Shown: in pieces, positions 12,790 to 52,469 of the stretch
Layout of the letters: every line of letters begins with the position of its first letter
Position numbering within the stretch: position 1 is the stretch's first letter
Source of the DNA: Macrostomum lignano
Lineage: Eukaryota
Length of the DNA: 64,000 nucleotides
Direction of reading: 5' to 3'
Assembly: GCA_002269645.1 (NCBI GenBank)
Contig: NIVC01000646.1
Span: 416,616-480,615 of the forward strand
The notes under the pieces: model-generated
The model's database searches: none
What the model saw: only the letters and a program-made list of their open reading frames with translations
What the model was told of the DNA's origin: nothing
Made by a program: the position numbers and the translations under genes

Positions 12790-14470
12790 AAAATTGGGGG
12801 GCAATTTGGAAGAGAGGACAATCTAGGAGGCAATCTGGGGGGCAATCTGGGGGCAATATGGGGGCAATATGGGGGCAATCTGGGGGCAATCTGGGGGCAA
12901 TTTGGGAGAGGGACAATCTAGGAGGCAATCAGGGGGGGAAATCTGGGGGCAATCTGGGGGCAATCTGGGGGGGGCAATCTGGGGGCAATCTGGGGGCAAT
13001 CTGGGGGGGGGGCAATCTGGGGGGGGCAATCTGGGGGGCAATCTAGGGGGGGCAATCTGGGGGGGGCAATCTGGGGGGCAATCTGGGGGGCAATCTGGGG
13101 GGCAATCTGGGGGCAATCTGGGGGCAATCTGGGGGCAATCTGGGGGGGGCAATCTGGGGGGGGCAATCTGGGGGTTCAATCTGGGGGCAATCTGGGGGCA
13201 ATCTGGGGGGGCAATCTGGGGGGCAATCTGGGGGGGCAATCTGGGGGCAATCTAGGGGCAATCTGGGGGGGGCAATCTGGGGGGGCAATCTGGGGGGGCA
13301 ATCTGGGGGGCAATCTGGGGGGGCAATCTGGGGGGGCAATCTGGGGGCAATCTGGGGGCAATCTGGGGGCAATCTGGGGGCAATCTGGGGGCAATCTGGG
13401 GGCAATCTGGGGCTATCTGGGGGCTATCTGGGGGCAATCTGGGGGCAATCTGGGTGGCAATCTGGGGGCAATCTGGGGGGGGCAATCTGGGGGCAATCTG
13501 GGGGGGGCAATCTGAGGGCAATCTGGGTGGCAATCTGGGGGCTATCTGGGGGGGCAATCTGAATCTGGGGGGGGGCAATCTGGGGCAATCTAGGGGCAAT
13601 CTGGGGGCAATCTGGGGGGCAATCTAGGGGCAATCTGGGGGCAATCTGGGGGGGGGCAATCTGGGGGCAATCTGGGGCGCAATCTGGGGGGCAATCTGGG
13701 GGGGCAATCTGGAGGCGCAATCTGGGGGCAATCTGGGGGCAATATGGGGGCAATATGGGGGCAATCTGGGGGCAATTTGGGAGAGGGACAATCTAGGAGG
13801 CAATCAGGGGGGGATCTCGGGGCAATCTGGGGGGCAATCTGGGGGCAATCTGGGGGAAATCTGGGGGCAATCTGGGGGGGCAATCTGGGGGGGGCAATCT
13901 GGGGGGGGCAATCTGGGGGCAATCTGGGGCAATCTGGGGGGGCAATCTGGGGGGCAATCTGGGGGGGCAATCTGGGGGGCAATCTGGGGGCAATCTGGGG
14001 GCAATCTGGGGGCAATCTGCATGGGGGGCAATCTGGGGGGCAATCTGGGGGGCAATCTGGGGGGGCAATCTGGGGGGGCAATCTGGGGGGCAATCTGGGG
14101 GGCAATCTGGGGGCAATCTGGGGGCAATCTGGGGGCAATCTGGGGGGGCAATCTGGGGGGGGCAATCAGGGGGGGCAATCTGGGGGCAATCTGGGGGCAA
14201 TCTGGGGGGCAATCTGGGGGGCAATCTGGGGGGGCAATCTGGGGGGGCAATCTGGGGGCAATCTGTGGGCAATCTGGCGGCAATCTGGGGGTGGCAATCT
14301 GGGGGGGGCAATCTGGGGGGGGCAATCTGGGGGGGCAATCTGGGGGGCAATCTGGGGGCAATCTGGGGGCAATCTGGGGGCAATCTGGGGGGCAATCTGG
14401 GGGCAATCTGGGGGCAATCTGGGGGCAATCTGGGGCAATCTGGGGGCAATCTGGGGGGCACTCTGGGGAC
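12790..14470. repeat. G-run array (G4-8 CAATCT)n
   Basis: CAATCT alternates with G tracts of variable length over ~1.7 kb. Confidence 0.95.
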
Positions 14471-15385: not shown

Positions 15386-15596
15386 TAATTAAAATGGCGT
15401 GAGGTCGGTGCTGGGGCGAGGCAAAAAGCAATGACCTATTGCCGAGCGCTGCATCTGAGGCTATTTAAGGCAAACAAGGACCAAAAAGGCACAACACAAT
15501 CCTATCAGCAAAATCCAAAGGGAATGAAAATAACTAGACTAGCCAAAATAGATACTTTAAATAGAACTAATTTCCGAATGAGTGAATCCAGTTCCT

Positions 15597-16865
15597 TCAT
15601 TCGCAGCCAATATAGTTGTAAAACTTAGGAAAAGATTTCCATTGTCTCCGCAATTTCTTCAACTGTGGCATTGTCAGAAGCCGCCGTCTCGCCCGCCTTG
15701 TCCGCTGGCACCTGCCGCCGGTCCTGGCTTCCAGCCGCAGCTTGCCGGCCCTGGCGTGCCGCACCGCCAGGGCGAAACTCACCGAGTCGTCCAGCCGGGC
15801 CAACCGCAAAGATTCTTCCACCTCGACCGCGGGCCGCCCGGCCGACTGCAGCCGCCAGCGCTCGCTCTTCTCCGTCCGGTGGCGCAGCAGTGCCTCGCGA
15901 ATTTTCGATCGCGACGCCAGGCTGATGTTCAGCGTCGAGCGCAGCGTCGCTACGAGGCTGCCGCCGCCGCCGCCGCCGTTAGATCGCAGCAGCCGCAGCA
16001 GCTCCTTTCGAGTCTGGCGACGCCTTCGCCGGCGCGCCCGCCGAGCCCGGTAGCCGCCAGCCGCCAGAGCCGGACAGACGCGCTCGGCCAGCAGGCTGGC
16101 CACCCTCGCCGACTCGAAGGCGAGCGTCAGCAGGTCGCGCCGGCAGTGAAGCTTCCGGCTACGCCGCAGACGACGCCGGAACACGCAGCCGCGGCGGCCC
16201 GTTCCAGCGTCGTCCAGAAAGGCCAGCGCGAGGTCCTTGTTGAAGTAGCGGTTCGCCAGCCTGACGGCCCGGTCTCCGGCTCGGGCGCGGAGTTTGGCGC
16301 GCAGCTGGCGCAGCTGGCGCCGAACCCGTCTGGTGAGCGCCGCTTTCTCCAGCGCGTGCGCCTCCGCGGCCGCCTTGGCAGCCGAGCAGCGCGCGTCAAC
16401 GTTGGCGCCGCCAGCGGCCTCGCTCTCTCTGAGACGCCGTCGAGTGGCCGAGTTCAGCGACTCGGTCTCCAAGCGCACCAGGCGGCCGGCGCCGATTTCC
16501 ACCTGTTCAGTCGGCCTCGTCTCGTTCCGGCGCGTCTTGTCCATCACAGTCCAGCGGAGACCGTCGGCGTCCACTTTGCGTCGCTCTTCCACCAGGAATA
16601 CGACTGACTTGGAGCGGCCGCGCAGCTCGCGCCCGTTCTGCGGATGGCTGTCGCTGATGCCGAGGTACCAGCGGCTTGCCGCCTTACGACTGCGCGTCCC
16701 ATTGCCGCCTCCTTTGACGGTAGCGTCCGGCAGGATGGCCCGGTAGAAGGTGGCCACGGTGAAGCGGCTGCTGGCGGGGCGGTGGCTCCGGTCTGGCAGT
16801 GGCAGGTCGGGCAGCAGCCGGCCGCGCCACAGGCAGTCCTCGGGCAGGCGGCCGGACTCGACTTT
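15597..16865 (-). CDS. FGF-like exon 3 (rest of core and basic tail)
   Basis: Part of ORF 15597..16907 after acceptor ccccgttgcag. GC-rich third codon positions continue nearly to the TGA stop. Confidence 0.85.
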   Translation of the reverse strand, partial: KVESGRLPEDCLWRGRLLPDLPLPDRSHRPASSRFTVATFYRAILPDATVKGGGNGTRSRKAASRWYLGISDSHPQNGRELRGRSKSVVFLVEERRKVDADGLRWTVMDKTRRNETRPTEQVEIGAGRLVRLETESLNSATRRRLRESEAAGGANVDARCSAAKAAAEAHALEKAALTRRVRRQLRQLRAKLRARAGDRAVRLANRYFNKDLALAFLDDAGTGRRGCVFRRRLRRSRKLHCRRDLLTLAFESARVASLLAERVCPALAAGGYRARRARRRRRRQTRKELLRLLRSNGGGGGGSLVATLRSTLNISLASRSKIREALLRHRTEKSERWRLQSAGRPAVEVEESLRLARLDDSVSFALAVRHARAGKLRLEARTGGRCQRTRRARRRLLTMPQLKKLRRQWKSFPKFYNYIGCE

Positions 16866-19800
16866 CTGCAACGGGGATTGGGGAGGTGGCCTTAACTGTA
16901 GATACATGTATAAGGTGCCTTATCTACGGAGTTTCTCTTGGATACAACTGCTTAGCAACGGGGCTTCCCTTAGATACACTTCTTACAAACAGGGACTAGT
17001 TTCGATGACGCAGATGTTGCAGCAGATTTTTAATAGGCATCTAAATAGAGGAACTGCGACATGATTGGCAAACTGCCAAATAACAGAGTGGTGCCAATTT
17101 TCTCATTGTCTGACGCCATCCTCAATTAGCCGCATCAATAAAAATGTTTAGAAATCGAATCCATAATCTACAAGTGTATAGCTGAATCCTCATACCGTTA
17201 TTGATGCCCAATTGATCAATTATGAATTATGAATTATGAATATGTTAGAAAATTATTGATTGTAAAGAAATTTAAATAGAGAACTTTTTTTGATTGATAA
17301 TTCTATGAAACTTTAAAACTTACATGACAAAGATACACTCGGACTGGCGTGAATGCAGTGCAGCCTATCCCTCTGCTGAGAGAGCCAGAATTGGGGTTGG
17401 GCGTGGATTGAACCTCCCGCTAAGAGAGACAGAATTGGGGTGGGCTTGGATGGAACCTCCCGCTAAGAGAGCCGGAATGGGGGTGGGCGTGGTTGAACCC
17501 TCCGCAGGAGAGCCGGAATTTGGGTGGGCGTGGATTGAACCTCCCGCTAAGAGAGCCAGAATTGGGGTGGGCGTGGATTGAATTTCCCGCTGAGAGAGCC
17601 AGAATTGGGGTGGGCGTTGATTGAACCTCCCGCTGAGAGAGCCGGAATTGGGGTGGGCGTGGTTGAACCCTCCGCAGGGACAGCCGGAATTGGGGTGGGC
17701 GTGGTTGAACCCCCCGCAGTGAGAGACAGAATTGGGGTGGGCGTGGATTGAACTTCCCGCTAAGAGAGATAGAATTGGGGTGGGCGTGGTTGAACCCCCC
17801 CCCCCGCAGGGAGAGCCAGAATGGAGTGAGGCGGATGGTAGTTAATGTACAAAGTTAATTACCGTGGTGTAGACATCCGCCAAGTTGTTCATGCAGATGT
17901 AGTGTTTCCCAAAATGGCTTTTGATTAAAAACTTAAATTCGCCTCTGTCCGAGGCCTTGTCGCCCGGCAGTTGTAGAGGCTGACCAGTGTTAAAGTTTAA
18001 CACCATCTGGACATTTAGCACTGGAAAATGTGAAATACGGGTTCAAGATTGCCGACTGTAAAAATCCGAAATTAAACTCATCGTTTTCAAAATGAATTAC
18101 TCAACTTTTTGTAGGCGGAAAAGCCTCGTTGAACTTCTCTACTACTTCGCATTTTGTTTAAGTTGGCAGCGTGCCAAAATGAGAGGAAGAATCTCCCCCC
18201 AAATATATCCTGAGTGGAGAATCCGCATAGGGTAGCAGGAGCGGAATGCGTGGGCGGTGGAGCCCTTGTGACTCAATACCCAATTGTGCATTCAATGGGA
18301 GCAGAACTGGACCAAGCAGTGTGAGGGGAGACAAAAGTAGTGCAGGCTAGAAACCAATTGGCTCGCTTCCAAGTTGGGATTAAAACCTGCATGAAGCTGG
18401 GATGATGTTCGCTCCTCTGCTACAAGTTGGCAGGCTGCCAGAACACGGGTAAATTTGTCTGAAAAATTGCCAGACAAAATAGAATACGGGTGGCAACGTA
18501 AATCTCTACTGCAGGCATTTTTATAGGCAGTCGGAAATTAATAATTAATCATTGCCGGCCTCAGCACGCATTTCCCATTCAATTTGATCAACAATATATA
18601 GAGTTGCGATTCCAAAAATTGTCGGCCACGTCGACTGCCGATATGTGGCGCAGAAAACTTTCTTATGGAGCTATTCGACTTGGTGTGCTGTTTGTGATGC
18701 TGTTTGTGGTGCTGTTTGTGGTGCTGTTTGTGATGCTGTTTGTGGTGCTGTTTGTGGTGCTGTTTGTGGTGCTGTTTGCGATACTGTTTGTGGTGCTGTT
18801 TGTGATGCTGTTTGTGGTGCTGTTTGTGATGCTGTTTGTGATGCTGTTTGTGGTGCTGTTTTTGATGCTGTTTGTGGTGCTGTTTGTGGTGCTGTTTGTG
18901 GTGCTGTTTGTGGTGCTGTTTGTGGTGCTGTTTGTGGTGCTGTTTGTGGTGCTGTTTGTGGTGCTGTTTGTGATGCTGTTTGTGGTGCTGTTTGTGATGC
19001 TGTTTGTGGTGCTGTTTGTGGTGCTGTTTGTGGTGCTGTTTGTGGTGCTGTTTGTGATGCTGTTTGTGGTGCTGTTTGTGATGCTGTTTGTGGTGCTGTT
19101 TGTGATGCTGTTTGTGATGCTGTTTGTGATGCTGTTTGTGGTGCTGTTTGTGGTGCTGTTTGTGGTGCTGTTTGTGATGCTGTTTGTGGTGCTGTTTGTG
19201 ATGCTGTTTGTGGTGCTGTTTGTGATGCTTTTTGTGGTGCTGTTTGTGATGCTGTTTGTGATGCTGTTTGTGATGCTGTTTGTGATGCTGTTTGTGGTGC
19301 TGTTTGTGGTGCTGTTTGTGGTGCTGTTTGTGGTGCTGTTTGTGGTGCTGTTTGTGGTGCTGTTTGTGGTGCTGTTGGTATTGCTAAAAATTGGGGCTGT
19401 TGCGGGGTGCCCAGTGGGCACTGCACAGTGTTGCAGAAGCTGGAGCACTCGAAGAGTTCAAGGCAGACAACTAATTGGGGTGAGCACTGACAGTCTGACA
19501 GACAGACAGACAGAAACTTGACAAGCTATAAAAACTCAAATATCTCGCTGACAGTTTCAAAGGGCCTTTCCAATGCACAGACACATAAAAACAAATATTT
19601 CTGTAGCTTCAAAAATCTTATTCGAATTTCAATAAATTTCAGACATTTGTTGAACTTTGAATCTGAAATTTACTGAGAGACTGTGAAAGAACTTTTGCCA
19701 AGTGCAGAGAAACTGAAGGAAGCTGAAAATCTGTACAGCAGTTCACTGTTCGTCATCAAAACAGCGATTGGTGAAGTTGAAATATGCTTATTGGACACTG

Positions 19801-21170
19801 CCTCAGCTTACGCAACTGAAAAATCTCACACTGCAACTCACACTGCAACTCGCACTGCAACTTGCACAGCATCTCACACTGCAACTCACACTGCAACTCG
19901 CACTGCAACTCACACTGCAACTCGCACTGCAACTCACACTGCAACTCACACTGCAACTCGCACTTCGCAACTCGCACTGCAACTCACACTGCAACTCACA
20001 CTGCAACTCACACTGCAACTCACACTGCAACTCACACTGCAACTCACACTGCAACTCACACTGCAACTCACACTGCAACTCACACTGCAACTCACACTGC
20101 AACTCGCACTGCAACTCACACTGCAACTCACACTGCAACTCACACTGCAACTCGCACTTCGCAACTCGCACTTCGCAACTCGCACTGCAACTCACACTGC
20201 AACTCACACTGCAACTCACACTGCAACTCACACTGCAACTCGCACTGCAACTCACACTGCAACTCACACTGCAACTCGCACTTCGCAACTCACACTGCAA
20301 CTCACACTGCAACTCACACTGCAACTCACACTGCAACTCACACTGCAACTCACACTGCAACTCACACTGCAACTCGCACTGCAACTCACACTGCAACTCA
20401 CACTGCAACTCGCACTGCAACTCGCACTTCGCAACTCACACTGCAACTCACACTGCAACTCACACTGCAACTCACACTGCAACTCACACTGCAACTCATA
20501 CTGCAACTCACACTGCAACTCATACTGCAACTCACACTGCAACTCGCACTTCGCAACTCACACTGCAACTCACACTGCAACTCACACTGCAACTCACACT
20601 GCAACTCACACTGCAACTCACACTGCATCTCACACTGCAACTCACACTGCATCTCACACTGCATCTCACACTGCAACTCACACTGCAACTTGCACTGCAA
20701 CTCACACTGCAACTTGCACTGCAACTCACACTGCAACTTGCACTGCAACTCACACTGCATCTCACACTGCATCTCACACTGCATCTCACACAGCAACTCT
20801 TACTGCAACTCACACTGATGAAGACACAGAAAGTACAGAAGGACCAAAGAAAGTTCACCGCCTCACCTGTCTCAGCCGTCCAGCCCTGAAACCGTTCGCT
20901 GCGCAGCCGACCCACCGAGCTCACGACCAGCGCCTCGCGCCTCTTAAAGTCGGCGCTATCGAAACCGCTGTTGCTCAGCGTCTCCATGGCCGCCTCGCCG
21001 ATGCTGAACCCAACTCGATGCGGACTGGCGCTTCGCCGTATCAGTTTGGCGCCGCCGGCGCTAGTAGGCGCTAATTCTAGCGCCTGCATTGCCGGTCTGG
21101 CGCCAGTGGATTTGATAGAAATTAAAATTATTAGAAGCAAAAGACTGCAAGGGTTCGGACCCGCCAGCAT
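15597..21170 (-). CDS. FGF8/17/18: Secreted fibroblast growth factor, FGF8/17/18-like, 3 exons (20867-21170, 17863-18020, 15597-16865), 576 aa, with long Arg-rich C-terminal extension
   Basis: Exons join in frame: 304+158+1269=1731 nt, intron phases 1 and 0. Donors ACAG|GTGAGG and ACG|GTAATT; acceptors ttttccag| and cgttgcag|. Signal peptide MLAGPNPCSLLLLIILISIKSTGA. Core motifs IKSHFGKHYICMN, EDCLW, RWYLGI and VVFL match FGF8-family YICMN / KDCVF / WYMAF / VHFM. Intron positions and phases match the FGF core. Confidence 0.82.
17379..17825. repeat. 44-bp minisatellite in FGF intron 2
   Basis: Unit contains GAATTGGGGTGGGCGTGG; about 10 copies. Confidence 0.92.
17863..18020 (-). CDS. FGF-like exon 2 (VLNVQMVL...FLIKSHFGKHYICMNNLADVYTT)
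   Basis: Absent from the ORF track. 158 nt, phase 1 in and phase 0 out, contains YICMN. Confidence 0.85.
18682..19377. repeat. 12-bp minisatellite in FGF intron 1
   Basis: (G[G/A]TGCTGTTTGT)n. Confidence 0.95.
19826..20815. repeat. 12-bp minisatellite in FGF intron 1
   Basis: (ACTGCAACTCAC)n. Confidence 0.95.
20867..21170 (-). CDS. FGF-like exon 1 (signal peptide and first strands)
   Basis: ATG at 21170, hydrophobic LLLLIILISI, consensus donor at 20866, phase 1. Confidence 0.75.
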
Positions 21171-21199: not shown

Positions 21200-21345
21200 C
21201 AACTTTGATAGAAAATTTGAGTCCCGAATCTGGGCTGCAAAACTTCAATGTGTCTCCGCTTTTTCGCCGAAAACTGCCCCCGTTTTATTTGCCGTCATGC
21301 CGTGGCGCGCGCCGGCTTCTGATTGGCTGGCCAGGGGTCCAAGCC
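21200..21345 (-). promoter_or_regulatory. Candidate FGF promoter
   Basis: CpG-rich patch (ggcgcgcgcc) and CCAAT box (plus-strand gattggc, ~21321) about 150 bp upstream of the ATG. Confidence 0.4.
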
Positions 21346-22155: not shown

Positions 22156-23600
22156 GTAATTAGTGGGGCCGAAACCTGTTCTCAGCAATTATCAGAAGTA
22201 ATTAGTGGGGCCGAAACCTGTTCTCAGCAATTATCAGAAGTAATTAGTGGGGCCGAACCTGTTCTCAGCAGTTATCAGAAGTAATTAGTGGGGCCGAACC
22301 TGTTCTCAGCAATTATCAGAAGTAATTAGTGGGGCCGAAACCTGTTCTCAGCAATTATCAGAAGTAATTAGTGGGGCCGAACCTGTTCTCAGCAGTTATC
22401 AGAAGTAATTAGTGGGGCCGAACCTGTTCTCAGCAATTATCAGAAGTAATTAGTGGGGCCGAACCTGTTCTCAGCAATTATCAGAGGTAATTTGTGAGGC
22501 CGAAACCTGTTCTCAGCAATTATCAGAGGTAATTAGTGGGGCCGAAACCTGTTCTCAGCAATTATCAGAGGTAATTAGTGGGGTCAAAACCTGTTCTCAG
22601 CAGTTATCAGAAGTAATTAGTGGGGCCGAACCTGTTCTCAGCAATTATCAGAGGTAATTAGTGGGGTCAAAACCTGTTCTCAGCAATTATCAGAAGTAAT
22701 TAGTGGGGCCGAAACCTGTTCTCAGCAATTATCAGAGGTAATTAGTGGGGCCGAAACCTGTTCTCAGCAATTATCAGAGGTAATTAGTGGGGCCGAAACC
22801 TGTTCTCAGCAATTATCAGAAGTAACTAGTGGGGCCGAAACCTGTTCTCAGCAATTATCAGAAGTAATTAGTGGGGCCGAAACCTGTTCTCAGCAATTAT
22901 CAGAGGTAATTAGTGGGGCCGAAACCTGTTCTCAGCAATTATCAGAAGTAATTAGTGGGGCCGAAACCTGTTCTCAGCAATTATCAGAAGTAATTAGTGG
23001 GGCCTGTTCTCAGCAATTATCAGAGGTAATTAGTGGGGCCGAAACCTGTTCTCAGCAATTATCAGAAGTAATTAGTGGGGCCGAAACCTGTTCTCAGCAA
23101 TTATCAGAGGTAATTAGTGGGGTCGAAACCTGTTCTCAGCAATTATCAGAGGTAATTAGTGGGGCCGAAACCTGTTCTCAGCAATTATCAGAAGTAATTA
23201 GTGGGGCCGAAACCTGTTCTCAGCAATTATCAGAGGTAATTAGTGGGGTCGAAACCTGTTCTCAGCAATTATCAGAGGTAATTAGTGGGGCCGAAACCTG
23301 TTCTCAGCAATTATCAGAAGTAATTAGTGGGGCCGAAACCTGTTCTCAGCAATTATCAGAGGTAATTAGTGGGGTCGAAACCTGTTCTCAGCAATTATCA
23401 GAGGTAATTAGTGGGGCCGAAACCTGTTCTCAGCAGTTATCAGAAGTAATTAGTGGGGCCGAAACCTGTTCTCAGCAGTTATCAGAAGTAATTAGTGGGG
23501 CCGAAACCTGTTCTCAGCAGTTATCAGAAGTAATTGGTGGGGCCGAACCTGTTCTCAGCAGTTATCAGAAGTAAATAGTGTGGCCGAAACCCATCAACAA
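22156..23600. repeat. 42-bp homogeneous minisatellite between METTL7 and FGF
   Basis: Unit GTAATTAGTGGGGCCGAAACCTGTTCTCAGCAATTATCAGAA, about 34 copies, no spacers. Confidence 0.95.
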
Positions 23601-23720: not shown

Positions 23721-24715
23721 CTACTTGACCGCAAAGCCCTCCAGCTGCTCCTGCACCAGCAGCGCATGCAGCGGCATGTCCCAGTTGCGCCCGTAGTTCA
23801 ACTGGCTGAAGCCGGCGCCGTCGAGACTGGCCTCCGGCTTGTTCAGCAGGCGGCAGTCACAGAACAGCAGCGACCAGGCGGGCTGGCAGAGCCACTGGAC
23901 CAGTCGAGCCCAACGCCGAGTAGAGGCTACGTGCTCCAGAAAGATAAACACGCCGTTCTGCGGGATTGTCGATATCGCGCATAGAAACCAGCATGGAAAC
24001 CGCATAGCAACCAGTATGAAACGGCACCGAAACCAAGCAAAAAAACCACATAGCAACCAGTATAGAAGTCGCATAACAACCAGCATAAAAACCGCATAGC
24101 TACCGGCATAGAAACTGCATAACAACCAGCATAGAAACCGCAAAGAAACCGCATAGCAACCAGCATAGAAACCGCATGGCAACAGGGAGAGAGAGCACGC
24201 ACTGGCTTGAGCACGCGGGCAATCTCCCCCAACACTCGGTCGGTGTCCCGCACGGAGCACAGCACAAACGTGCCCACAACAGCGTCGAAAGATTCGTCGG
24301 GAAAAGCGTCGACCAGATCTTCGGCGCCGCGGACTAGGTGCCGCTCCAGCCGAATGCTCGGCCACCTGGCGACCTCGGACAGCAGGTAGGGCCGGGTTGC
24401 CAGACAGGGGTCCACAACGGACAGGAAGATGCGGCCGCGAAACGCGGCCGTCATGAAGGCGAAGTTCGCCCCGGACCCGCCGCCAACCTCCAGAACGCGG
24501 ATGAAGCGGCGCCCGGAGAATCTGTCGCCGAGGCAGGCGAACAGCTTCCGCTTCCGGTCCCAGCAGAGAGCGTTGTAAGCCCGGGAAATTCGGTCCATCA
24601 GGTGGGCGTACACCTCGGCGCGGTGGCGGCTGTACAGCAGGACCACGGCGCCGAGGAGGAACACCGCGGCGGCGATGGTTGATGATACAAGCGAGCAGTC
24701 AGACAGGTGCAACAT
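23721..24715 (-). CDS. METTL7: METTL7/TMT1-like SAM-dependent thiol methyltransferase, exons 24203-24715 and 23721-23957, 249 aa
   Basis: N-terminal membrane anchor; LEVGGGSGANF (motif I); DESFDAVVGTFVLCSV; VLKP|NGVFIFLEHV across a phase-0 intron. Confidence 0.92.
23985..24180. repeat. Degenerate ~23-bp repeat filling the METTL7 coding intron
   Basis: CATAGCAACCAGCATAGAAACCG-like units. Confidence 0.8.
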
Positions 24716-24744
24716 TGTGCTCAGGACCTTGCGGGTTGTTAGAG

Positions 24745-26257
24745 TGGGGGGTCAGGGTGCTGGAGTAGGGGTCAGAGTGTTGGAGTGGGGTCAGGGTGTT
24801 GCAGTGGGGTCAGGGTGTTGCAGTGGGGTCAGGGTGTTGGAGTGGGGGTTAGGGTGCTGGAGTGGGGGTTAGGGTGTTGGAGTGGGGTCAGGGTGTTGGT
24901 GGGGTCAGGGTGCTGGAGTAGGGGTCAGGGTGTTGGAGTGGGGTCAGGGTGCTGGAGTAGGGGTCAGGGTGTTGGAGTGGGGTCAGGGTGCTGGAGTAGG
25001 GGTCAGGGTGTTGGAGTGGGGTCAGGGTGCTGGAGTAGGGGTCAGGGTGTTGGAGTGGGGTCAGGGTATTGGAGTGGGGTCAGGGTGCTGGAGTAGGGGT
25101 CAGGGTGTTGGAGTGGGGTCAGGGTGCTGGAGTAGGGGTCAGGGTGTTGGAGTGGGGTCAGGGTATTGGAGTGGGGTCAGGGTGCTGGAATAGGGGTCAG
25201 GGTGTTGGATGTTGGTGGGGTCAGGGTGCTGGAATAGGGGTCAGGGTGTTGGAGTGGGGTCAGGGTGCTGGAGTAGGGGTCAGGGTGTTGGAGTGGGGTC
25301 AGGGTATTGGAGTGGGGTCAGGGTGCTGGAGTAGGGGTCAGGGTGTTGGAGTGGGGTCAGGGTGCTGGAGTAGGGGTCAGGGTGTTGGAGTGGGGTCAGG
25401 GTATTGGAGTGGGGTCAGGGTGCTGGAATAGGGGTCAGGGTGTTGGATGTTGGTGGGGTCAGGGTGCTGGAATAGGGGTCAGGGTGTTGGAGTGGGGTCA
25501 GGGTGCTGGAGTGGGGTCAGGGGGCTGGAATAGGGGTCAGGGTGTTGGAGTGGGGTCAGGGTGCTGGAGTAGGGGTCAGGGTGTTGGAGTAGGGGTCAGG
25601 GTGTTGGAGTGGGGTCAGGGTATTGGAGTGGGGTCAGGGTGCTGGAATAGGGGTCAGGGTGTTGGAGTGGGGTCAGGGTGCTGGAGTAGGGGTCAGGGTG
25701 TTGGAGTGGGGTCAGGGTATTGGAGTGGGGTCAGGGTGCTGGAATAGGGGTCAGGGTGTTGGATGTTGGTGGGGTCAGGGTGCTGGAATAGGGGTCAGGG
25801 TGTTGGAGTGGGGTCAGGGTGCTGGAGTGGGGTCAGGGGGCTGGAATGGGGGTCAGGGTGTTGGAGTGGGGTCAGGGTGCTGGAGTAGGGGTCAGGGTGT
25901 TGGAGTAGGGGTCAGGGTGTTGGAGTGGGGTCAGGGTATTGGAGTGGGGTCAGGGTGCTGGAATAGGGGTCAGGGTGTTGGATGTTGGTGGGGTCAGGGT
26001 GCTGGAGTAGGGGTCAGGGTGTTGGAGTGGGGTCAGGGTGCTGGAGTAGGGGTCAGGGTGTTGGAGTGGGGTCAGGGTATTGGAGTGGGGTCAGGGTGCT
26101 GGAATAGGGGTCAGGGTGTTGGATGTTGGTGGGGTCAGGGTGCTGGAATAGGGGTCAGGGTGTTGGAGTGGGGTCAGGGGGCTGGAATGGGAGTCAGGGT
26201 GTTGGAGTGGGGTCAGGGTGCTGGAGTAGGGGTCAGGGTGCTGGAGTGGGGGTCAGG
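24745..26257. repeat. G-rich ~20-bp minisatellite with higher-order blocks
   Basis: GGGGTCAGGGTG(T/C)TGGAGT units; variant GGATGTTGGT recurs at 140-320 bp intervals. Confidence 0.95.
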
Positions 26258-26313
26258 GATCAATTGAGAAAATTAGAACAAGTGCGCTGTAACTTCAGGT
26301 GCGACTCACTTAC

Positions 26314-26400: not shown

Positions 26401-26887
26401 AGAAATATTTATATACAGGCTACCCCCCCCACCCAGGCTCTCTCAATCATCGCCAATGTTCAGCTTGATCCAACTGCGGTTTCCAAGAGGGCGTTGCCAC
26501 ACTATAAGCCATGGGGCGTCACCGGAAGAAAGGCGCGCCTGCATGACGGTGATGAAGGATTAGGGACGGCTAACCTGAGGGCTCGTTAAAGTGCTCTCCG
26601 GTGGCATCCAGCCACCCACACAAATAATCCTTGCACGCGGGATAAAAGCGGCAATCAAACAAACACGGATACCGCAGCTGAGTCAAGTCCGCTTCCGCAT
26701 CTGATAGGCTTGCCAGCCTGGCCTTCAATTATAGCTCATGACAGATGAGGCTGGCAAAGCTTTTTATTGCACATCTGAGCAGTAGAATGAATGGCTCATT
26801 GTACTTGCGATTCACGGGATTACACCCTAGCAACCAGTTAGAGATCGCCGCTACAAAGAGAAAAGCAAAGAAATCAAACTGTTGCAG

Positions 26888-28215
26888 AGGTGGGTCAGCT
26901 CATGATTCACACTGGGTCAATCGGGAGAGAGGTGGGTCAGCTCATGATTCACACTGGGTCAATCTCGGAGAGGTGGGTCAGCTCATGATTCAAACTGGGT
27001 CAATCTCGGAGAGAGGTGGGTCAGCTCATGATTCAAACTGGGTCAATCTCGGAGAGGTGGGTCAGCTCTTGATTCACACTGGGTCAATCTCGGAGAGAGG
27101 TGGGTCAGCTCATGATTCAAACTGGGTATATCGGGAGAGAGGTGGGTCAGCTCATGATTCACACTGGGTCAATCTCGGAGAGAGGTATGTCAGCTCATGA
27201 TTCAAACCGGGTCAATCTCGGAGAGAGGTGGGTCAGCTCATGATTCAAACTGGGTCAATCTCGGAGAGGTGGGTCAGCTCATGATTCAGACTGGGTCATT
27301 CTCGGAGAGAGGTGGGTCAGCTCATGATTCACACTGGGTCAATCTCGGAGAGAGGTGGGTCAGCTCATGATTCACACTGGGTCAATCTCGGAGAGAGGTA
27401 GTGTCAGCTAATGATTCAGACTGGGTCAATCTCGGAGAGAGGTGGGTCAGCTCATGATTCACACTGGGTCAATCTCGGAGAGGTGGGTCAGCTCATGATT
27501 CACACTGGGTCAATCTCGGAGAGAGGTGGGTCAGCTCATGATTCAGACTGGGTCAATCTCGGAGAGAAAGGGGTCAGCTCATGATTCACACTGGGTCAAT
27601 CTCGAAGAGAGGTGGGTCAGCTCATGATTCACACTGAGTCAATCTCGAAGAGATTGGGGGGTCAGCTCATGATTCAAGCTGGGTAAATCGGGAGAGAGGT
27701 GGGTCAGCTCATGATTCACACTGGCTCAATCTCGGAGAGAGGTGCGTCAGCTCATGATTCACACTGGGTAAGTCGGGAGAGAAGTGGGTCAGCTCATGAT
27801 TCACACTGGGTAAATCGGGAGAGAGGTGGGTCAGCTCATGATTCACACTGGGTCAATCTCGGAGAGAGGCGGGTCAGCTCATGATTCACACTGGGTCAAT
27901 CTCGGAGAGAGGTAGTGTCAGCTAATGATTCAGACTGGGTCAATCTCGGAGAGAGGTGGGTCAGCTCATGATTCAAACTGGGTCAATCTCGGAGAGAGGT
28001 GGGTCAGCTCATGATTCAAACTGGGTCAATCGGGAGAGAAGTGGGTCAGCTCATGATTCACACTGGGTCAATCTCGGAGAGGTGGGTCAGCTCATGATTC
28101 ACACTGGGTCAATCTCGGAGAGAGGTGGGTCAGCTCATGATTCAAACTGGCTCAATCTCGGAGAGAGGCGGGTCAGCTCATGATTCAAACTGGGTCAATC
28201 GGGAGAGAAGTGGGT
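26888..28215. repeat. 39-43-bp minisatellite
   Basis: Unit GAGAGGTGGGTCAGCTCATGATTCACACTGGGTCAATCTCGGA. Confidence 0.95.
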
Positions 28216-28885
28216 CAAGAAAAATCGGATTAGATAAAAAGAAAATAACGAGCAGAAAATGCGTGAAAACAAAGATTTCCAAATACAAACTGGTCCTCCA
28301 AAAACCAAAATAAAAATTATAATACTCCCTCTATTTAGCAAGACCGCAATACGCTACTTATAATTTATTGCAAAGTAGCAATTTAAGGACATAAAATAAG
28401 CCAGAGAGACAGATGCACAAATCAAATAAATTGAATAATATGCAACAAATAAAAGTTGACTCGAATCGATAACATAATATCCAAAAACAGATAAGCCAAC
28501 ATGTCACCCGCGGAAGAAAACAACAAAGTGAATCACGAGACGGCGCAAAAATCAGTTAATAAAATCAGCGCATTAATAAATTAAGGAAGGCTAAGCTTTT
28601 GCTGCGATAAAAATCGAATATTCGACTATGGATTAGTAAATATGATGACAACTAATGTCATCATCAAAAATACTATTGTGCGAGCGAAATTAATTATGAC
28701 ACGCCACTCTATACGCTCAGACACTTAACTACAATCACGTGTGGCATGAAAAGGATAGATACGATTGTAGACAGAATCGATATTCATACATTTATAGAAT
28801 ATTACATATTAATACATATATCGGTTGAGACGGACCGATGGGCTAAGAAGACAGACAGGCACACTAAACTGCCACTAAGAAAGAA

Positions 28886-41900: not shown

Positions 41901-44169
41901 AATTTCTCATAACCCACCTGAATCGCTCATAACCCACCTGAATCGCTCATAACCCACCTGAATCGCTCATAGCCCACCTGAATCACCATTACCTAACCAG
42001 GAATGGCTCAGCCATTAGACCCCGCACTCACCTAGCACAGTGAACACCGAGCCAAGCATCAGCAGGCAGAAGGTTGGCGATCGCAGCATCCCAGGTGACA
42101 GCATTTTGCGCAGCGCCGATCTGGCCGGAGCCGCTGGCCGCCCGGCGTCGACCGGCACCGTGGTGGCCGAGCGATAGAAATCTCGGCCACCGGCGCCACC
42201 GCCCCCGCCAGCAGCGCCGGGGGCCCGCGTGGCCCGACAGTACTCGGCAACGTGGCGCAGCGAGCCGGAATGGAATACGTCTTTGCGATTGAGCGGTCGG
42301 AGCACTTCCCGACGCAGCGAACGGCCGATAGCCTCGCGAACCTGCGGCAGCAATAAAGCATTTTAAATAAAACAGTCACTGTGGCTGTTTTGTTCAGGGT
42401 CACCATGCTACCGTTTACTGTGACTGTTTTGTTAAGGGTCTCAATGCTACCGTTCACTGTGACTGTTTTGTTCAGGGTCACCATGTTACCGTTCACTGTG
42501 ACTGTTTTGTTCAGGGTCACCATGTTACCGTTCACTGTGACTGTTTTGTTCAGGGTCTCCATGCTACCATTCACTGTCAAATATGGCCTAGGTACCCTCT
42601 AGATAGCTAGAGCGCCCACCTCCTCGGTGATTTCAGTCGAGCCGCTCAGCAGAGCCATCGCAGCCCCGTTGATTGCCGCCGGCCCGCCAGCTGCCGAAGT
42701 TGCCGTGCCGGCTAGAGACGTGCCCGACGCAAAATTCGATTGATCAGGCGTCGGAACTTCGGAATTGAGCGCCGTGTGCGGCTGCAGCGGCGCGCCGACC
42801 AGATGCGGCTGATTCGCTGCCGGATCATTGCTGCTGACGCCGCCGACTGCTAGAGAAGTTTGGCTTTGGGCGAAGTCGCCGACGCCTGCGCCGCCGCTAA
42901 TGCCTCCGCTCACGCCGCTGACGCCGCCGCCTCCGCCTCTGACGGTAGCAGCCAGCTGAGACAGGCTGCCCTTGGCTGTGGCGGCCGCCTCGGCCAGGAA
43001 GCTGTGCCTGCTAGTTAAACGACGCGATCCTGCGCCGGAAGCAGCCGCAGCCGCTGTCGCAGCAGAATAGCCGGGCGTTTTCCTGCGCAGAACATTCTCG
43101 GCTATGCGGTGGATCGCCTCCATGCTGAGCATTGGCCGGTCATCAAAGTCTGGGGGCGGCGGCTCCACCCGATTAGCCGTAGTGATGATCCAGCCGTTTA
43201 GGGAGCCCTGCGTTGGTTAGTGAGAGATTAGGGCTGCCTCTGCGCACCGGTTTTATGGGGAATCTAAGGACGGGCTAGTGGGGAATTTAAGCATTGGCTA
43301 GTGGGGAATCTGAGCATTGGATAGTGGGGAATCTGAGCATTGGCTAGTGGGGAATCTGAGCATTGGATAGTGGGGAATCTGAGCATTGGCTAGTGGGGAA
43401 TCTGAGCATTGGATAGTGGGGAATCTGAGCATTGGCTAGTGGGGAATCTGAGCATTGGCTTATGGGGAATCTGAGGACTGGCTAGTGGGGTATCTGAGCA
43501 CTGGCTACTGGGGAATTTGGGCACTGGCTAGTGGGGAATCTGAGGACTGGCTAGTGGGGAATCTGAGCACTGGCTACTGGGAATCTGAGGACTGACTCAT
43601 GGGAAATCTGAGGATTGGCTAGAGAGGAATCTGAGGACTGGCTTATGGGGAATTTCAGGACTGGCTCATGGGTAATCTGAGGACCGGTTCTAATTGCTAA
43701 AATTTAAATTTTAAGGCCGCGCACAAAAAGTCGCCCACCGCTCACCTGGCTAATATTTCTCTCACGCTTCTTATTCTCCACCAGCTTCCGCATGATGTTC
43801 CCCTTGACGCGCGGCTCGCCGCGGGCCAGCCGGCGCAGCTCCCGCTTAGCCAGGATGTCGTAGTAGCGATCCAGCGGCATCAGCAGGGAGCCGGCGACAA
43901 CGCAGTTGAACAGCACACCGGCCAGCACCATGAGGGCGCCTCGCCAGGTCAGCTGGTCGACCAGCTGATCGGTGGCCAGGGCTACGGCGGCCGTGCCGAC
44001 GCCACTGCCGCAGACGCCGATGCCGGTGGCGATGGCTCGTCGACGCTCGAACCAGAAGCCGACAGTGACTACGGCTGGCAGGTAGACTAGGCCTAGGCTG
44101 GCGCCTGCGGGCGGAGCCGGGGTGGACGGCTACAGACACTGAGACAGACAGCCAGACAGACAGCCAGAC

Positions 44170-51198: not shown

Positions 51199-51750
51199 GA
51201 CTGACTAACTAACTAACTAACTAACTGACTAACTAACTAACTGACTAGATAACTGACTAACTGAGTAATTAACTAACTAACTAGCTAAAAATCTAACCAA
51301 CAGTACTAGCTATTTAACTAACAATTTAACTAATGATTAAGGAGCTAATGAACTCCAATTGAACTCACCAAACAGCATGTAGACGCCAAACACGGTGCTG
51401 CCGATCAGAGACAGCTCTGCCGGCCCCCTGCCAGCAAAGGATTCGCTAATCCGGTCGCGAGCTACGCTAAAAAACGAATAGCAAAAGCCGTCAACAAGGC
51501 CGTGGCAGAGGAATGCGCCAAGCACAATGAACCAAGCGTAGCCCTTGTCCGGCGGGCTGGGAGGCCCGGCCGCGTCCACACCAGCCGGTGGCAGCGACGC
51601 TGTCGCCTGGGGAGGATTGGGATTCGGCGAAGTAAAATAACTGTAGGATTCTGCCGCTGACTGCGGCGGCTGCTGATGCTGAGGGTCTGGTGGTTCGGCA
51701 ACCACCTGGCCAGCAGCTGCAGGCGGCTGCTGCTGCTGCGGATTCGTCAT
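37587..51750 (-). CDS. SLC16: SLC16/monocarboxylate-transporter family MFS protein: exons 51369-51750, 47747-47890, 43746-44104, 42620-43207, 42032-42341, 41234-41356, 39058-39204, 37587-38179 (2646 nt, 881 aa)
   Basis: [11 protein letters not shown] (MCT motif 1), [56 protein letters not shown]. Long central loop. All seven introns are GT-AG with matching phases. Confidence 0.93.
38215..39050. repeat. (CAGA)n filling the last SLC16 intron
   Basis: Direct reading. Confidence 0.95.
40085..40375. repeat. Four-copy 53-83-bp repeat with CCAAT-like motifs
   Basis: GACGAAACTCAGCCTAGGGG recurs four times. Confidence 0.8.
41415..41985. repeat. 20-bp minisatellite (sense strand ...TTCAGGTGGGT...)
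   Basis: Unit ACCCACCTGAATCGCTCATA, about 28 copies. Confidence 0.95.
42375..42580. repeat. 39-bp repeat, about 5 copies, filling an SLC16 intron
   Basis: Period 39 (42378 to 42417). Confidence 0.9.
43255..43690. repeat. 23-bp minisatellite
   Basis: CTAGTGGGGAATCTGAGCATTGG units. Confidence 0.9.
44135..44515. repeat. (CAGA)n just upstream of an SLC16 acceptor
   Basis: Direct reading. Confidence 0.95.
45022..46540. repeat. 25-bp purine minisatellite
   Basis: Unit GATGGAGGGTGAAGAGTTGAGAGGA. Confidence 0.95.
47230..47715. repeat. ~23-bp minisatellite
   Basis: CAGAGTGACAGATTTACTAGAAC-like units. Confidence 0.9.
48110..49275. repeat. (CAGA)n grading into 12-bp GACACTAAGACA with 188-bp higher-order copies
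   Basis: Identical ORFs at 48498 and 48686 show the 188-bp period. Confidence 0.92.
50018..51335. repeat. (ACTA/ACTG)n compound tetranucleotide array
   Basis: Direct reading; starts about 30 nt after the SLC16 exon 1 donor. Confidence 0.95.
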
Positions 51751-52162
51751 GATCGAGAAGTTCAGCAGCTCTGAGTCTTATTTTTGCAGAATTTAAAACT
51801 GAAAAATTTAATTTAAAAAGAACTTATTTAGCGAATAAACTTGGGCCAAAAAGAATCATGAACTCATTTAGTAATGTTCTATTTTTAGAAACCTGACGAG
51901 TACTGGCCTAAGTACTTGCAACTTAAAATTAGTATTAAGTAAGTACAACAATAGTCCACTGTCTCGACAAGTTGAAATAGACTATAAATAGAATCATATT
52001 GTCATATTCTTTATGTACAGTGACAATACATATCCAAGAAAAGTCTGCTCACTTCTATATCTAGTGTGCTGTGTGCTGTGTTTGACACAATGCACACTAC
52101 ATAGTATGTTCTCTTAAAATTGCACAATACCTAAATTAGTTTTCCATTATGCAACATATACT

Positions 52163-52469
52163 AATCATAATAATTGATTACTGATTACACCTGCCCTATT
52201 GGGCACATGTGCAACCGACCGCTCAGCCGCAGCTATTGCGCGGCGCATCTGAAGGCTATGTACGGCTGTTCAGTCCAAGAACTGGGGGGTCGCCACACAC
52301 CCTTAATTACCCCATTGAATGCTGGCACCCATTTTACAGCTAGATGAACTGAAGCAATGCAGAGTTGAGTGTCTTGCTCAAGGACACAAATTGTTCCAGT
52401 GGGATTGGGAATCGAACCCACAACCTTCAAGTTGTGAGTCCGACGCTCTAACCACTAGGCTACAACCCC
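52163..52469 (-). mobile_element. tRNA-derived CORE-like SINE, copy 2
   Basis: A box TAGCCTAGTGG (52452-52462), B box GGTTCGATTCC (52408-52418), CORE-like segment ~52328-52387, AT-rich tail. Confidence 0.85.

What the first reader, a model, noticed from the sequence alone, without database searches (positions are those of the whole stretch)
15597..21170. Hidden, highly divergent secreted FGF8/17/18-like ligand
Seen: a signal-peptide exon, an unlisted 158-nt exon and a large terminal exon splice into one 576-aa frame. Known: YICMN, xDCxF/W, WY(M/V)A and a final VxF are FGF beta-trefoil hallmarks. FGF8 has a phase-1 intron before the LIVET strand and a phase-0 intron between the YICMN segment and the DC segment; both are reproduced here. 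Inference: this is a real FGF. Flatworm FGF ligands have been hard to detect even though their receptors are known. Automated annotation would probably keep only the Arg-rich exon as a hypothetical protein.
Basis: partly seen in the sequence, partly recalled or inferred. Interest (0 to 1): 0.9.

Follow-up and report, generated by a model that had tools for sequence, protein, structure and literature searches.

The report
Divergent FGF-like secreted protein gene
The three-exon gene is real and conserved in the flatworm Macrostomum lignano, and it probably encodes a very divergent, secreted FGF8-like growth factor with a long arginine-rich tail, but FGF membership rests on several weak concordant clues, not on a threshold-passing profile hit or a predicted fold.

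Summary
On the minus strand, 21170-20867, 18020-17863 and 16865-15597 join through GT..AG introns (phases 1 and 0) into one 576-aa frame with an N-terminal signal-like segment.

A scan of 1.84 billion proteins found one relative: Macrostomum lignano PAA71187.1 ("hypothetical protein", 607 aa). It has the same architecture, and its first two introns sit at exactly homologous positions and phases.

The FGF reading is partly supported.
- Pfam FGF is the only credible family hit for both proteins, but below threshold (17.5 and 12.6 bits; cut-off 24).
- hhalign against an FGF alignment gives 65-72% probability (E 3-6e-5) over 39-43 columns (strands β5-β8). The score is about 8 SD above shuffled controls.
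- The only PDB sequence hit of the M. lignano core is FGF8b (E 0.56).
- The phase-0 intron lies 8 codons after the "MN" of YICMN, as I recall it does in FGF2 and FGF8.
- The Cys pair matching FGF18 C109/C127 is conserved.

Against:
- Both AlphaFold runs failed (pLDDT 33-34), so the fold is untested.
- The equivalent of the receptor-binding Glu (FGF2 E96) is Gly.
- Intron 1 matches only if an 18-20-aa loop insertion is assumed.

Verdict: a real gene, probably (~0.65-0.75) an FGF-derived secreted ligand.

The parts
21283..21326 (-). Possible core promoter: CCAATCAG (21326-21319) and AAATAAAA (21290-21283), about 150 and 115 nt upstream of the ATG.
   Evidence: Direct reading of the sequence and pattern search. 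Suggestive only, not tested.
20867..21170 (-). Coding exon 1 (304 nt, aa 1-101 plus 1 nt). It holds the signal-like peptide MLAGPNPCSLLLLIILISIKSTGA (21170-21099) and a divergent N-terminal region where FGF strands β1-β3 would lie.
   Evidence: This is the only strongly hydrophobic segment of the protein. It aligns with exon 1 of the M. lignano gene.
18021..20866 (-). Intron 1 (2846 nt, phase 1, GT..AG). It is filled with two 12-nt satellite arrays (19825-20817 and 18685-19376).
   Evidence: The homologous phase-1 intron in M. lignano is 12.6 kb.
17863..18020 (-). Coding exon 2 (158 nt, aa 102-154). It holds the candidate β4 (LNVQMVL), an 18-aa extra loop, β5 (FKFLIKS), β6 (HYICMN, 17901-17887) and β7 (DVYTT).
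   Evidence: It is 46% identical to the M. lignano 164-nt exon 2. The Pfam FGF and hhalign matches start here.
16866..17862 (-). Intron 2 (997 nt, phase 0, GT..AG) with a 43-nt tandem array (17375-17800). It lies 8 codons after the N of YICMN.
   Evidence: M. lignano has the same position and phase. The position matches the FGF2 S94|K95 and FGF8 LIAK|SNG intron, which I cite from memory. PMC11733497 confirms that two core introns are ancestral in FGF genes.
16578..16865 (-). First part of exon 3: the rest of the FGF-like core (aa 155-250). It holds EDCLW (16841-16827), a roughly 30-aa insertion, a conserved N-glycosylation sequon NGT (16703-16695; the coordinates reported, 16703-16692, are for the four-residue match NGTR), RWYLGI (16673-16656) and VVFLV (16604-16590).
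   Evidence: A weak second match to my FGF HMM is colinear with the first (aa 213-245 against profile positions 103-135).
15597..16577 (-). Rest of exon 3: a 326-aa arginine-rich tail (21% Arg). It has conserved Cys residues, a conserved NIS sequon, nine R-x-[KR]-R furin-like sites, the conserved C-terminus FPKFYNYIGCE, and the TGA stop at 15599-15597.
   Evidence: It aligns with the tail of the M. lignano protein (RQLRQLR, LN[IV]SL, FPxFY..C). It has no Pfam or PDB match.

Best explanation
The locus is an intact three-exon gene for a 576-aa secreted protein. The N-terminal ~250 aa are most likely a highly divergent FGF-type β-trefoil domain, closest to the FGF8/17/18 type. The remaining ~325 aa are a conserved, cysteine-containing, arginine-rich tail.

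Proposed mechanism:
- Shown: a signal-like peptide, conserved N-glycosylation sequons and a conserved core Cys pair. These are what support the next, inferred, step.
- Inferred: the protein enters the secretory pathway.
- Inferred: the FGF-like core engages an FGF receptor or FGFR-like protein.
- Inferred: the basic tail binds heparan sulphate or matrix and restricts range. Alternatively it is removed at its many R-x-[KR]-R sites. As I recall, this is how Drosophila Pyramus and Thisbe are processed.
For: **The gene is real**
- The frame is open across canonical splice sites.
- A full-length homologue exists in M. lignano, with introns at homologous residues and phases.
- An independent M. lignano entry (P0003) also joins exons 2 and 3.

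**FGF link**
- Pfam FGF is the only credible Pfam hit (one other at E 6.5) for the window protein (E 0.004, 17.5 bits) and the sole hit for the M. lignano protein (E 0.14). Both match the same profile region, 46-70/76.
- hhalign against a 10-FGF alignment gives probability 65-72% and E 3-6e-5.
- The local rerun of the same comparison scored 32.4, against 12.7 ± 2.3 (maximum 21) for 150 column shuffles.
- A weak second segment covering WYLG...VVFL is colinear with the first.
- The only PDB sequence hit at E ≤ 10 for the M. lignano core is FGF8b, 2fdb_M.
- In anchored motif scoring, the M. lignano core scores best against FGF8, FGF17 and FGF18.
- There are two introns inside the putative core, as in the ancestral FGF gene (PMC11733497). 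Phases are 1 and 0. Intron 2 is exactly 8 codons after ...MN, as in FGF2 and FGF8 (gene structures from memory).
- Cys144 and Cys165 are invariant and correspond to the FGF8/17/18-specific pair, C109/C127 in FGF18 (the FGF18 sequence was checked; that these two Cys form a disulphide in FGF18 is from memory).
- The signal-like segment is the only hydrophobic stretch, and there are three conserved N-x-S/T sequons.
Against: - Both Pfam scores are below the gathering cut-off of 24 bits, and only 25-35 residues match.
- Two-sequence profiles found no FGF among PDB sequences.
- phmmer against 1.84 billion representatives found no canonical FGF.
- Both AlphaFold2 runs gave pLDDT 33-34, so no β-trefoil has been shown.
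- Foldseek on those models was not significant.
- Several residues invariant in my FGF alignment are not kept. The FGF8 E109 / FGF2 E96 equivalent is Gly, and G92 is Ala in the window protein.
- The core needs insertions of about 18 and about 30 aa.
- The N-terminal third does not align detectably.
- No expression data were available.
Confidence: 0.62

Rival explanations
1. It is a lineage-specific secreted, arginine-rich protein of macrostomid flatworms with no FGF ancestry. The roughly 40-residue resemblance (IKx..YICMN..DCxW) and the intron phases would be coincidence.
For: - The Pfam hits are sub-threshold.
- No FGF was found by the phmmer or profile searches.
- Only 39-43 of about 125 core columns align.
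- The key invariant Glu is absent.
- The fold is not demonstrated.
Against: - FGF is the single family recovered by three searches that were not restricted to FGF: Pfam with 24,736 models, and PDB sequences for the M. lignano core.
- The hhalign score is about 8 SD above shuffles.
- The intron 2 position and phase are identical to the FGF core intron.
- The downstream WY[LV]G and xxF[LH] motifs are colinear.
- The Cys pair is conserved and a signal peptide is present.
- These are partly independent lines that all point the same way.
Confidence: 0.2
2. It is FGF-derived but no longer an FGFR ligand. The core would have been re-used, for example as a heparan-sulphate or matrix-binding protein. 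Another possibility is a protein whose Arg-rich tail targets it to the nucleus or nucleolus, as I recall for FGF3 or the FHFs.
For: - The receptor-contact Glu (FGF2 E96 equivalent) is replaced by Gly in both species.
- There are large loop insertions.
- More than half of the protein is a conserved basic tail with its own conserved Cys residues and motifs, which suggests the tail has a function of its own.
Against: - A signal-like peptide and conserved N-glycosylation sequons argue for the secretory route.
- As I recall, long basic tails coexist with genuine FGFR ligand function in Drosophila Pyramus, Thisbe and Branchless.
- There are no data on binding either way.
Confidence: 0.15
3. It is a mis-modelled or dead locus: a GC-rich chance ORF joined to unrelated fragments, or a pseudogene.
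For: - Exon 3 is 69% GC, and the opposite strand also carries a 341-aa ORF.
- No transcript evidence was available.
Against: - There is protein-level conservation over all three exons with a distant homologue.
- Splice positions are conserved.
- There are no frameshifts or stops.
- The GC pattern by codon position looks coding.
Confidence: 0.03

Closest known systems
Macrostomum lignano PAA71187.1 / PAA64592.1 (BOX15_Mlig028597g1 / Mlig024534g2, UniRef A0A267FDE8), annotated as a hypothetical protein
   Same: - The architecture is the same: signal peptide, core with YICMN / LPEDCLWRG / RWYLG, Arg-rich tail, and a C-terminal FPxFY..C motif.
- Identity is 46% in the core and 28% overall.
- The first two introns are at homologous residues with phases 1 and 0.
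- It gives the same sub-threshold Pfam FGF hit.
   Different: - It is too divergent to be the same gene in the same strain.
- It has one extra phase-0 intron in the tail and a 12.6-kb first intron.
- Its GC3 is 0.61, against 0.82 for exon 3 of the window gene (window CDS by exon: 0.65/0.64/0.82).
- Its 10-kb flanks show no synteny with the window.
- Whether the two are orthologues in different species or old paralogues is not resolved.
Vertebrate FGF8/17/18 subfamily (FGF8b PDB 2FDB, FGF18 PDB 4CJM)
   Same: - The β5-β8 block is shared (V/I-K/R-G..Y-I/L-C-M-N..G..L/V...D/E-C-x-F/W).
- The subfamily-specific Cys pair is present.
- WY[VLM][GA][FI] and the final xxF are present.
- A secretion signal is present.
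- There are two core introns with phases 1 and 0, and intron 2 is at the identical codon distance from ...MN.
   Different: - The match does not reach the Pfam threshold.
- The N-terminal third is unalignable.
- There are insertions of about 18-20 aa after β4 and about 30 aa after β8.
- The invariant Glu after DCxF is Gly.
- It has a 326-aa basic tail, where the vertebrate proteins have a short C-terminus.
Drosophila Pyramus / Thisbe (FGF8-like) and Branchless (from my own knowledge, not tested here)
   Same: An N-terminal secreted FGF domain is followed by a very long, poorly conserved C-terminal tail. That tail is thought to be cleaved or to modulate range and activity.
   Different: The flatworm tail is Arg-rich, has conserved Cys residues and is conserved between the two flatworm sequences.
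Planarian Djfgf (Dugesia japonica; Auwal et al. 2020, cited in PMC8662385 and bioRxiv 10.1101/2024.11.26.625069)
   Same: It is a flatworm FGF ligand candidate, reported to influence neoblast proliferation, ERK signalling and anterior-posterior patterning.
   Different: Djfgf was recognisable as an FGF, whereas this gene family is annotated only as hypothetical.

Membership tests
FGF family (Pfam PF00167) | The profile HMM score reaches the curated gathering threshold (24 bits). | tested here: not met
   The window protein scores 14.0 bits full length and 17.5 bits for the aa 49-256 fragment (E 0.004). The M. lignano homologue scores 12.6 bits (E 0.14). Only profile positions 46-70/76 are matched. 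FGF is nevertheless the only credible Pfam hit for the window protein (one other at E 6.5) and the sole hit for the M. lignano protein.
FGF family | A 12-stranded β-trefoil fold. | tested here: inconclusive
   AlphaFold2 with 2- and 3-sequence alignments gave pLDDT 32.9 and 34.0. Foldseek hits were not significant: FGF1 chains were top for the M. lignano model at E ≥ 1.2 and TM ≤ 0.21, and the window model gave only noise.
FGF family | The conserved central core motif block (β5-β8: G-x-V-x-I-K-G...Y-L-A-M-N...G-x-L...[DE]-C-x-F). | tested here: met
   hhalign gave probability 65-72% and E 3-6e-5 over 39-43 columns. A local rerun of hhalign on the same two alignments scored 32.4, against 12.7 ± 2.3 for shuffles. 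Y, M, N and C are identical, and F is replaced by W.
FGF family | C-terminal core motifs (N-x-Y-N-T-Y, W-[YF]-[VI]-[AG]-L, G-x-x-x-x-G, x-F-L-P). | tested here: inconclusive
   RWYLGI and VVFLV are colinear with the first match, with a weak HMM segment (0.4 bits). The N-x-Y motif is not clearly present. The glycine pattern is partial.
FGF family | The ancestral gene structure: two introns inside the core (ici1 and ici2). | tested here: met
   There are two introns within the putative core in both the window gene and the M. lignano gene. PMC11733497 states that two core introns are ancestral.
FGF family | The exact position and phase of the core introns: phase 1 before β4, a 104-nt middle exon, and phase 0 eight codons after ...MN. 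| tested here: inconclusive
   Intron 2 has the identical distance and phase. Intron 1 has the same phase, but the middle exon is 158 nt (164 nt in M. lignano) rather than 104, so an 18-20-codon insertion is needed. The reference positions in FGF2 and FGF8 come from memory and were not verified with data here.
FGF family (secreted paracrine type) | An N-terminal signal peptide. | tested here: met
   A hydrophobic h-region (SLLLLIILISI) is followed by a T-G-A c-region. It is the only hydrophobic 19-mer in the protein, and the same holds for the M. lignano protein. No dedicated signal-peptide predictor was available.
FGF family | Receptor-contact residues (the FGF2 E96 equivalent after DCxF, and the N102-type Asn). 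| tested here: not met
   At the column of the invariant Glu (FGF8 E109), both flatworm proteins have Gly (CLWRG). The Asn of N-x-Y cannot be placed.
FGF family | Binds and activates an FGF receptor. | not testable with these tools
   This needs biochemistry or genetics.
FGF8/17/18 subfamily | The subfamily Cys in β6 (Y-[IL]-C-M-N), paired with the D/E-C Cys. | tested here: met
   Cys144 and Cys165 (Cys142 and Cys163 in M. lignano) are invariant. They correspond to FGF18 C109/C127 in the sequence verified. That these two Cys form a disulphide in FGF18 is from memory.
FGF8/17/18 subfamily | Phylogenetic grouping with FGF8/17/18, Pyr/Ths and EGL-17. | tested here: inconclusive
   Too few columns align for a tree. 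The sole PDB hit of the M. lignano core is FGF8b (E 0.56), and its motif scores are highest with FGF8/17/18. The window protein does not discriminate between subfamilies.

The most novel reading that the evidence does not exclude
Macrostomid flatworms carry a genuine but extremely divergent FGF8-type ligand with a conserved arginine-rich C-terminal domain. It has gone unnoticed as a "hypothetical protein". It would be a physiological ligand for flatworm FGFR or FGFR-like (nou-darake-type) receptors. Its sequence would also give a bridge profile for finding the "missing" FGF ligands of other flatworms, including the parasites reported to lack canonical FGFs.
Probability: 0.35. Interest if true: 0.7.

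Novelty: new variant of a known kind. Interest (0 to 1): 0.5.

Why it matters
FGF receptors and FGFR-like genes (nou-darake) are central to work on flatworm stem cells, brain development and axis patterning. The ligands have been hard to find. A 2019 study stated that no canonical FGF ligand had been identified in free-living flatworm, trematode or cestode genomes (PMC6426264). One planarian FGF followed in 2020.

A conserved, secreted FGF-like gene in Macrostomum, a transgenic-capable regeneration model, would give a concrete candidate ligand for RNAi, in situ hybridisation and receptor-binding tests. It would also show how far an FGF core can drift: loop insertions, loss of the canonical Glu, and a 326-aa basic tail. 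A two-species seed could then be grown into a profile for re-searching other flatworm genomes.

If the FGF link fails, this is still a conserved secreted basic protein family of unknown function. That would be of modest interest.

Tried and rejected
- **The search for homologous proteins.** Three calls timed out. Two returned nothing and did not even recover the M. lignano protein that is in the collection.
- **The look-up of encoding contigs.** The 436-aa exon-3 ORF is not on record.
- **Metagenome scan** with the two-sequence alignment gave no relative.
- **Two-sequence profiles against PDB sequences** gave no FGF. The window fragment alone gave only noise hits to TbpB.
- **AlphaFold2**, once on the window core and once on the M. 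lignano core, was uninformative both times. Foldseek on those models was not significant.
- **Global hhalign** gave an alternative, low-confidence placement of β1-β4 (47). I did not rely on it.
- **Synteny and shared repeats** between the window and the M. lignano locus: none found beyond microsatellites. The organism of the window therefore stays undetermined.
- **The tail** has no Pfam or PDB match.
- **The Djfgf paper** is not held, so no comparison with the planarian FGF was possible.
- **Rejected idea:** the 341-aa ORF on the plus strand (15582-16607) as a gene. It is the antisense shadow of the GC-rich exon 3.
Full report
**1. The observation**

Reading the minus strand and splicing 21170-20867, 18020-17863 and 16865-15597 gives 1731 nt. 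That is 576 codons plus TGA, with no internal stop.
- Both introns start with GT and end with AG, in good context. Their phases are 1 and 0.
- The ATG at 21170 is preceded by an in-frame stop 8 codons upstream.
- Exon 2 is a short open stretch between stops. The other two frames are closed, and the GC content by codon position looks coding.
- The mechanical ORF list contains only exon 1 (run on into a satellite) and the 436-aa exon-3 ORF. The 158-nt exon is indeed "unlisted".
The third is WYLG, not WY(M/V)A.

**2. Independent support for the gene model**

phmmer with aa 49-293 against 1.84 billion representative proteins returned exactly one protein at E ≤ 0.001 (P0001, E 2.4e-19). It is 46% identical from the first residue of exon 2 to about aa 240.
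- P0001 is PAA71187.1, "hypothetical protein BOX15_Mlig028597g1" of Macrostomum lignano. A near-identical copy (PAA64592.1) and a 499-aa MetaClust entry that starts inside exon 2 also exist.
- Full-length BLASTP gives 28% identity over 554 aa, E 6e-34. The order of parts is the same: signal peptide, core, Arg-rich tail with RQLRQLR and LN[IV]SL, and the C-terminal FPxFY..C.
- I recovered the M. lignano locus (L001) and solved its exon structure so that it reproduces the protein exactly. The exons are 292, 164, 864 and 504 nt, with intron phases 1, 0 and 0.
- The first two introns fall at the homologous residues. These are N|A|LEIQMVL against T|V|LNVQMVL, and FVHTV|MKQDG against DVYTT|KVESG.

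The three-exon model is therefore conserved across a large evolutionary distance. I regard it as real (about 0.95), although I could not inspect any RNA data.

**3. Is it an FGF? Sequence evidence**

- Pfam (24,736 models, E ≤ 10) returns FGF PF00167 as the only credible hit for the window protein; the full-length scan also lists DUF7739 at E 6.5, which is noise. The score is 17.5 bits, E 0.004, for the aa 49-256 fragment and 14 bits for the full length. The match covers aa 133-157 against profile positions 46-70 and crosses the exon 2/3 junction.
- For the M. lignano protein FGF is the sole hit (12.6 bits, E 0.14, profile 46-76). Both scores are below the 24-bit gathering score.
- I built a 10-sequence FGF alignment. 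FGF8b, FGF18, FGF9 and a consensus FGF were checked against PDB output.
- hhalign of the two-flatworm profile against it gives probability 65% (E 5.9e-5, 43 columns) and, for the trimmed core, 72.5% (E 3.2e-5, 39 columns). The alignment runs IKS-HFGKHYICMNNLADVYTT-KVESGRLPEDCLWRGRLLP against IKGxESxxYLAMNKKGKLYGS----xxECxFxExxLEN. This is strands β5 to β8.
- In 150 column shuffles the hhalign score was 12.7 ± 2.3 (maximum 21.0), against 32.4 for the real profile in that local rerun.
- A small HMM of the FGF alignment also finds a second, very weak but colinear segment: SRKAASRWYLGISDSHPQNGRELRGRSKSVVFL against sakyee-wyvalkkkGrpkkgsktrkeqkavhFl.
- phmmer of the M. lignano core against all 177,635 distinct PDB sequences at E ≤ 10 returns a single chain, human FGF8b 2fdb_M. 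At E 0.56 it is not significant on its own.
- Against the link: the window fragment and the two-sequence profiles found no FGF in the PDB, and no canonical FGF appeared in the 1.84-billion-protein scan.

**4. Gene-structure evidence**

A 2024 study states that all amphioxus Fgf genes keep two introns inside the core FGF domain, and infers that these are ancestral (PMC11733497). The window gene and the M. lignano gene each have exactly two introns within the putative core.

From memory, the FGF2 introns split codon 60 (phase 1) and separate codons 94/95 (phase 0). The middle exon is 104 nt, and FGF8 is split as ...PFA(K)|LIVET... and ...LIAK|SNGKGKDC. I could not check this against data here.

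Counting without gaps from the invariant ...MN, the phase-0 intron lies after 8 residues in each case:
- FGF2: EDGRLLAS|K
- FGF8: KKGKLIAK|S
- window protein: NLADVYTT|K
- M. lignano protein: SEGFVHTV|M

Position and phase are the same in all four. hhalign independently aligns T|K with K|S.

Intron 1 has the FGF phase (1). It is followed by a β4-like strand (LNVQMVL / LEIQMVL; compare LEIRAVE and LIVETDT). However, it lies 40 or 42 residues upstream of the Tyr of YICMN, rather than 22. The middle exon is 158 or 164 nt rather than 104. Homology of intron 1 therefore needs an 18-20-residue insertion between β4 and β5.

The low-confidence AlphaFold secondary structure is compatible with that reading. 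It places strands on ALEIQMVL, FLIRG, RYICM and VHTVM, with a loop between the first two. I give this little weight.

**5. Other features**

- The only strongly hydrophobic segment in either protein is the N-terminus (MLAGPNPCSLLLLIILISIKSTGA|RP), which fits a signal peptide.
- The core has exactly two Cys (144 and 165; 142 and 163 in M. lignano). They sit at the columns of FGF18 C109 and C127. The β6 Cys is peculiar to FGF8/17/18 among the FGFs I aligned.
- Three N-x-S/T sequons are at comparable positions in both proteins.
- The 326-aa tail is 21% Arg. It has nine R-x-[KR]-R sites, and its Cys residues are conserved between the two species. It matches nothing in Pfam or the PDB.
- Anchored motif scoring puts the M. 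lignano protein closest to FGF8, FGF17 and FGF18 (77, 77 and 67, against 30-59 for the others). The window protein does not discriminate.

**6. What speaks against membership**

- The curated Pfam threshold is not met.
- Only about a third of the trefoil aligns with confidence.
- The residue at the invariant Glu column (FGF8 E109, FGF2 E96) is Gly in both flatworm proteins. G92 is Ala in the window protein. The N-x-Y-N-T-Y motif is not recognisable.
- Both structure predictions were useless because the alignment has only two divergent sequences (pLDDT 32.9 and 34.0).
- Foldseek on the M. lignano model lists FGF1 chains first, but at E ≥ 1.2 and TM ≤ 0.21. The window model gives unrelated noise.
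- The fold is therefore untested.

**7. Synthesis**

Four partly independent lines point to FGF, and to no other family:
- unbiased profile searches;
- profile-profile similarity well above shuffled controls;
- core intron number, phase and position;
- a secretion signal together with the FGF8-type Cys pair and colinear C-terminal motifs.

I estimate about 0.75 that the core descends from an FGF. I estimate about 0.6 that the protein still works as a secreted ligand of FGFR-type receptors.

Its architecture, an N-terminal FGF-like domain followed by a very long basic tail, resembles what I recall of Drosophila Pyramus, Thisbe and Branchless. By analogy I propose that the tail tethers the protein to heparan sulphate or is removed by furin-type proteases. 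This is inference only.

Because a formal defining test (the Pfam cut-off) failed and the fold is unknown, I describe it as an FGF-like variant rather than file it as an FGF family member.

**8. Context and novelty**

- The window is eukaryotic. About 38% of it is tandem arrays, including arrays inside both introns.
- The organism is not identified. The nearest protein is from M. lignano, but there is no shared interspersed repeat or synteny with the M. lignano locus, and GC3 differs (0.82 for exon 3 of the window gene against 0.61 for the M. lignano CDS). The source is therefore either another macrostomid-like species or an old paralogue.
- Literature: in 2019 no canonical FGF ligand had been found in flatworm genomes (PMC6426264). 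Djfgf of Dugesia japonica was described in 2020 (cited). I found no paper in the held library describing a Macrostomum FGF ligand.
- The finding is therefore a plausible, testable candidate rather than a categorical novelty.

Noticed in passing
window 1-64000 (e.g. 12819-14468, 22156-23591, 24748-26258, 26886-28217, 45024-46500): The density of tandem repeats is extreme. About 38 distinct arrays with TRF score of at least 200 cover about 24.6 kb (38%) of the window, with periods from 4 to about 190 nt. Both introns of the gene are largely satellite (12-nt and 43-nt units).
   Followed up: partly
window 23930-24751 (-): The open frame has a clear SAM-dependent methyltransferase domain (Pfam Methyltransf_11, 40 bits, E 5.7e-10; motif LEVGGGSG). 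It is probably an exon of the neighbouring gene, upstream of the FGF-like gene on the same strand.
   Followed up: partly
window 43707-44129 (-); possibly also 51340-51777 (-) and 42602-43216 (-): There is an exon with a Major Facilitator Superfamily match (MFS_1, 34 bits). By eye it looks like a monocarboxylate-transporter-type gene spread over about 10 kb. The other ORFs gave no Pfam hit.
   Followed up: partly
window 52398-52470 (-): A tRNA-Val (anticodon CAC) gene was found by both ARAGORN and Rfam (38.6 bits).
   Followed up: no
window 54252-54827 (-): This 192-aa open frame carries a motif (LFQAVVETALLYNAETWTL) that reminds me of the C-terminal part of LINE reverse transcriptases. It gave no Pfam hit, so this is only an impression.
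   Followed up: no
window 15582-16607 (+): A 341-aa ORF lies antisense to exon 3. It is a by-product of the 69% GC, stop-poor coding sequence on the other strand, not a gene.
   Followed up: yes
L001 10001-24944 (M. lignano NIVC01001181.1): The M. lignano homologue has a 12.6-kb first intron and an extra phase-0 intron in the tail (after aa 440) that the window gene lacks. Its record carries no Pfam annotation at all.
   Followed up: yes
window 15600-16577 (-) and P0001 aa 255-607: The Arg-rich tail is not mere low complexity. Four or five Cys residues, RQLRQLR, an LN[IV]SL sequon and the terminal FPxFY..C are conserved between the two species. This suggests an undescribed C-terminal domain.
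   Followed up: partly
tool behaviour: the search for homologous proteins did not return the M. lignano protein even when queried with its own sequence, although listing of cluster members shows it is in the collection.
   Followed up: no
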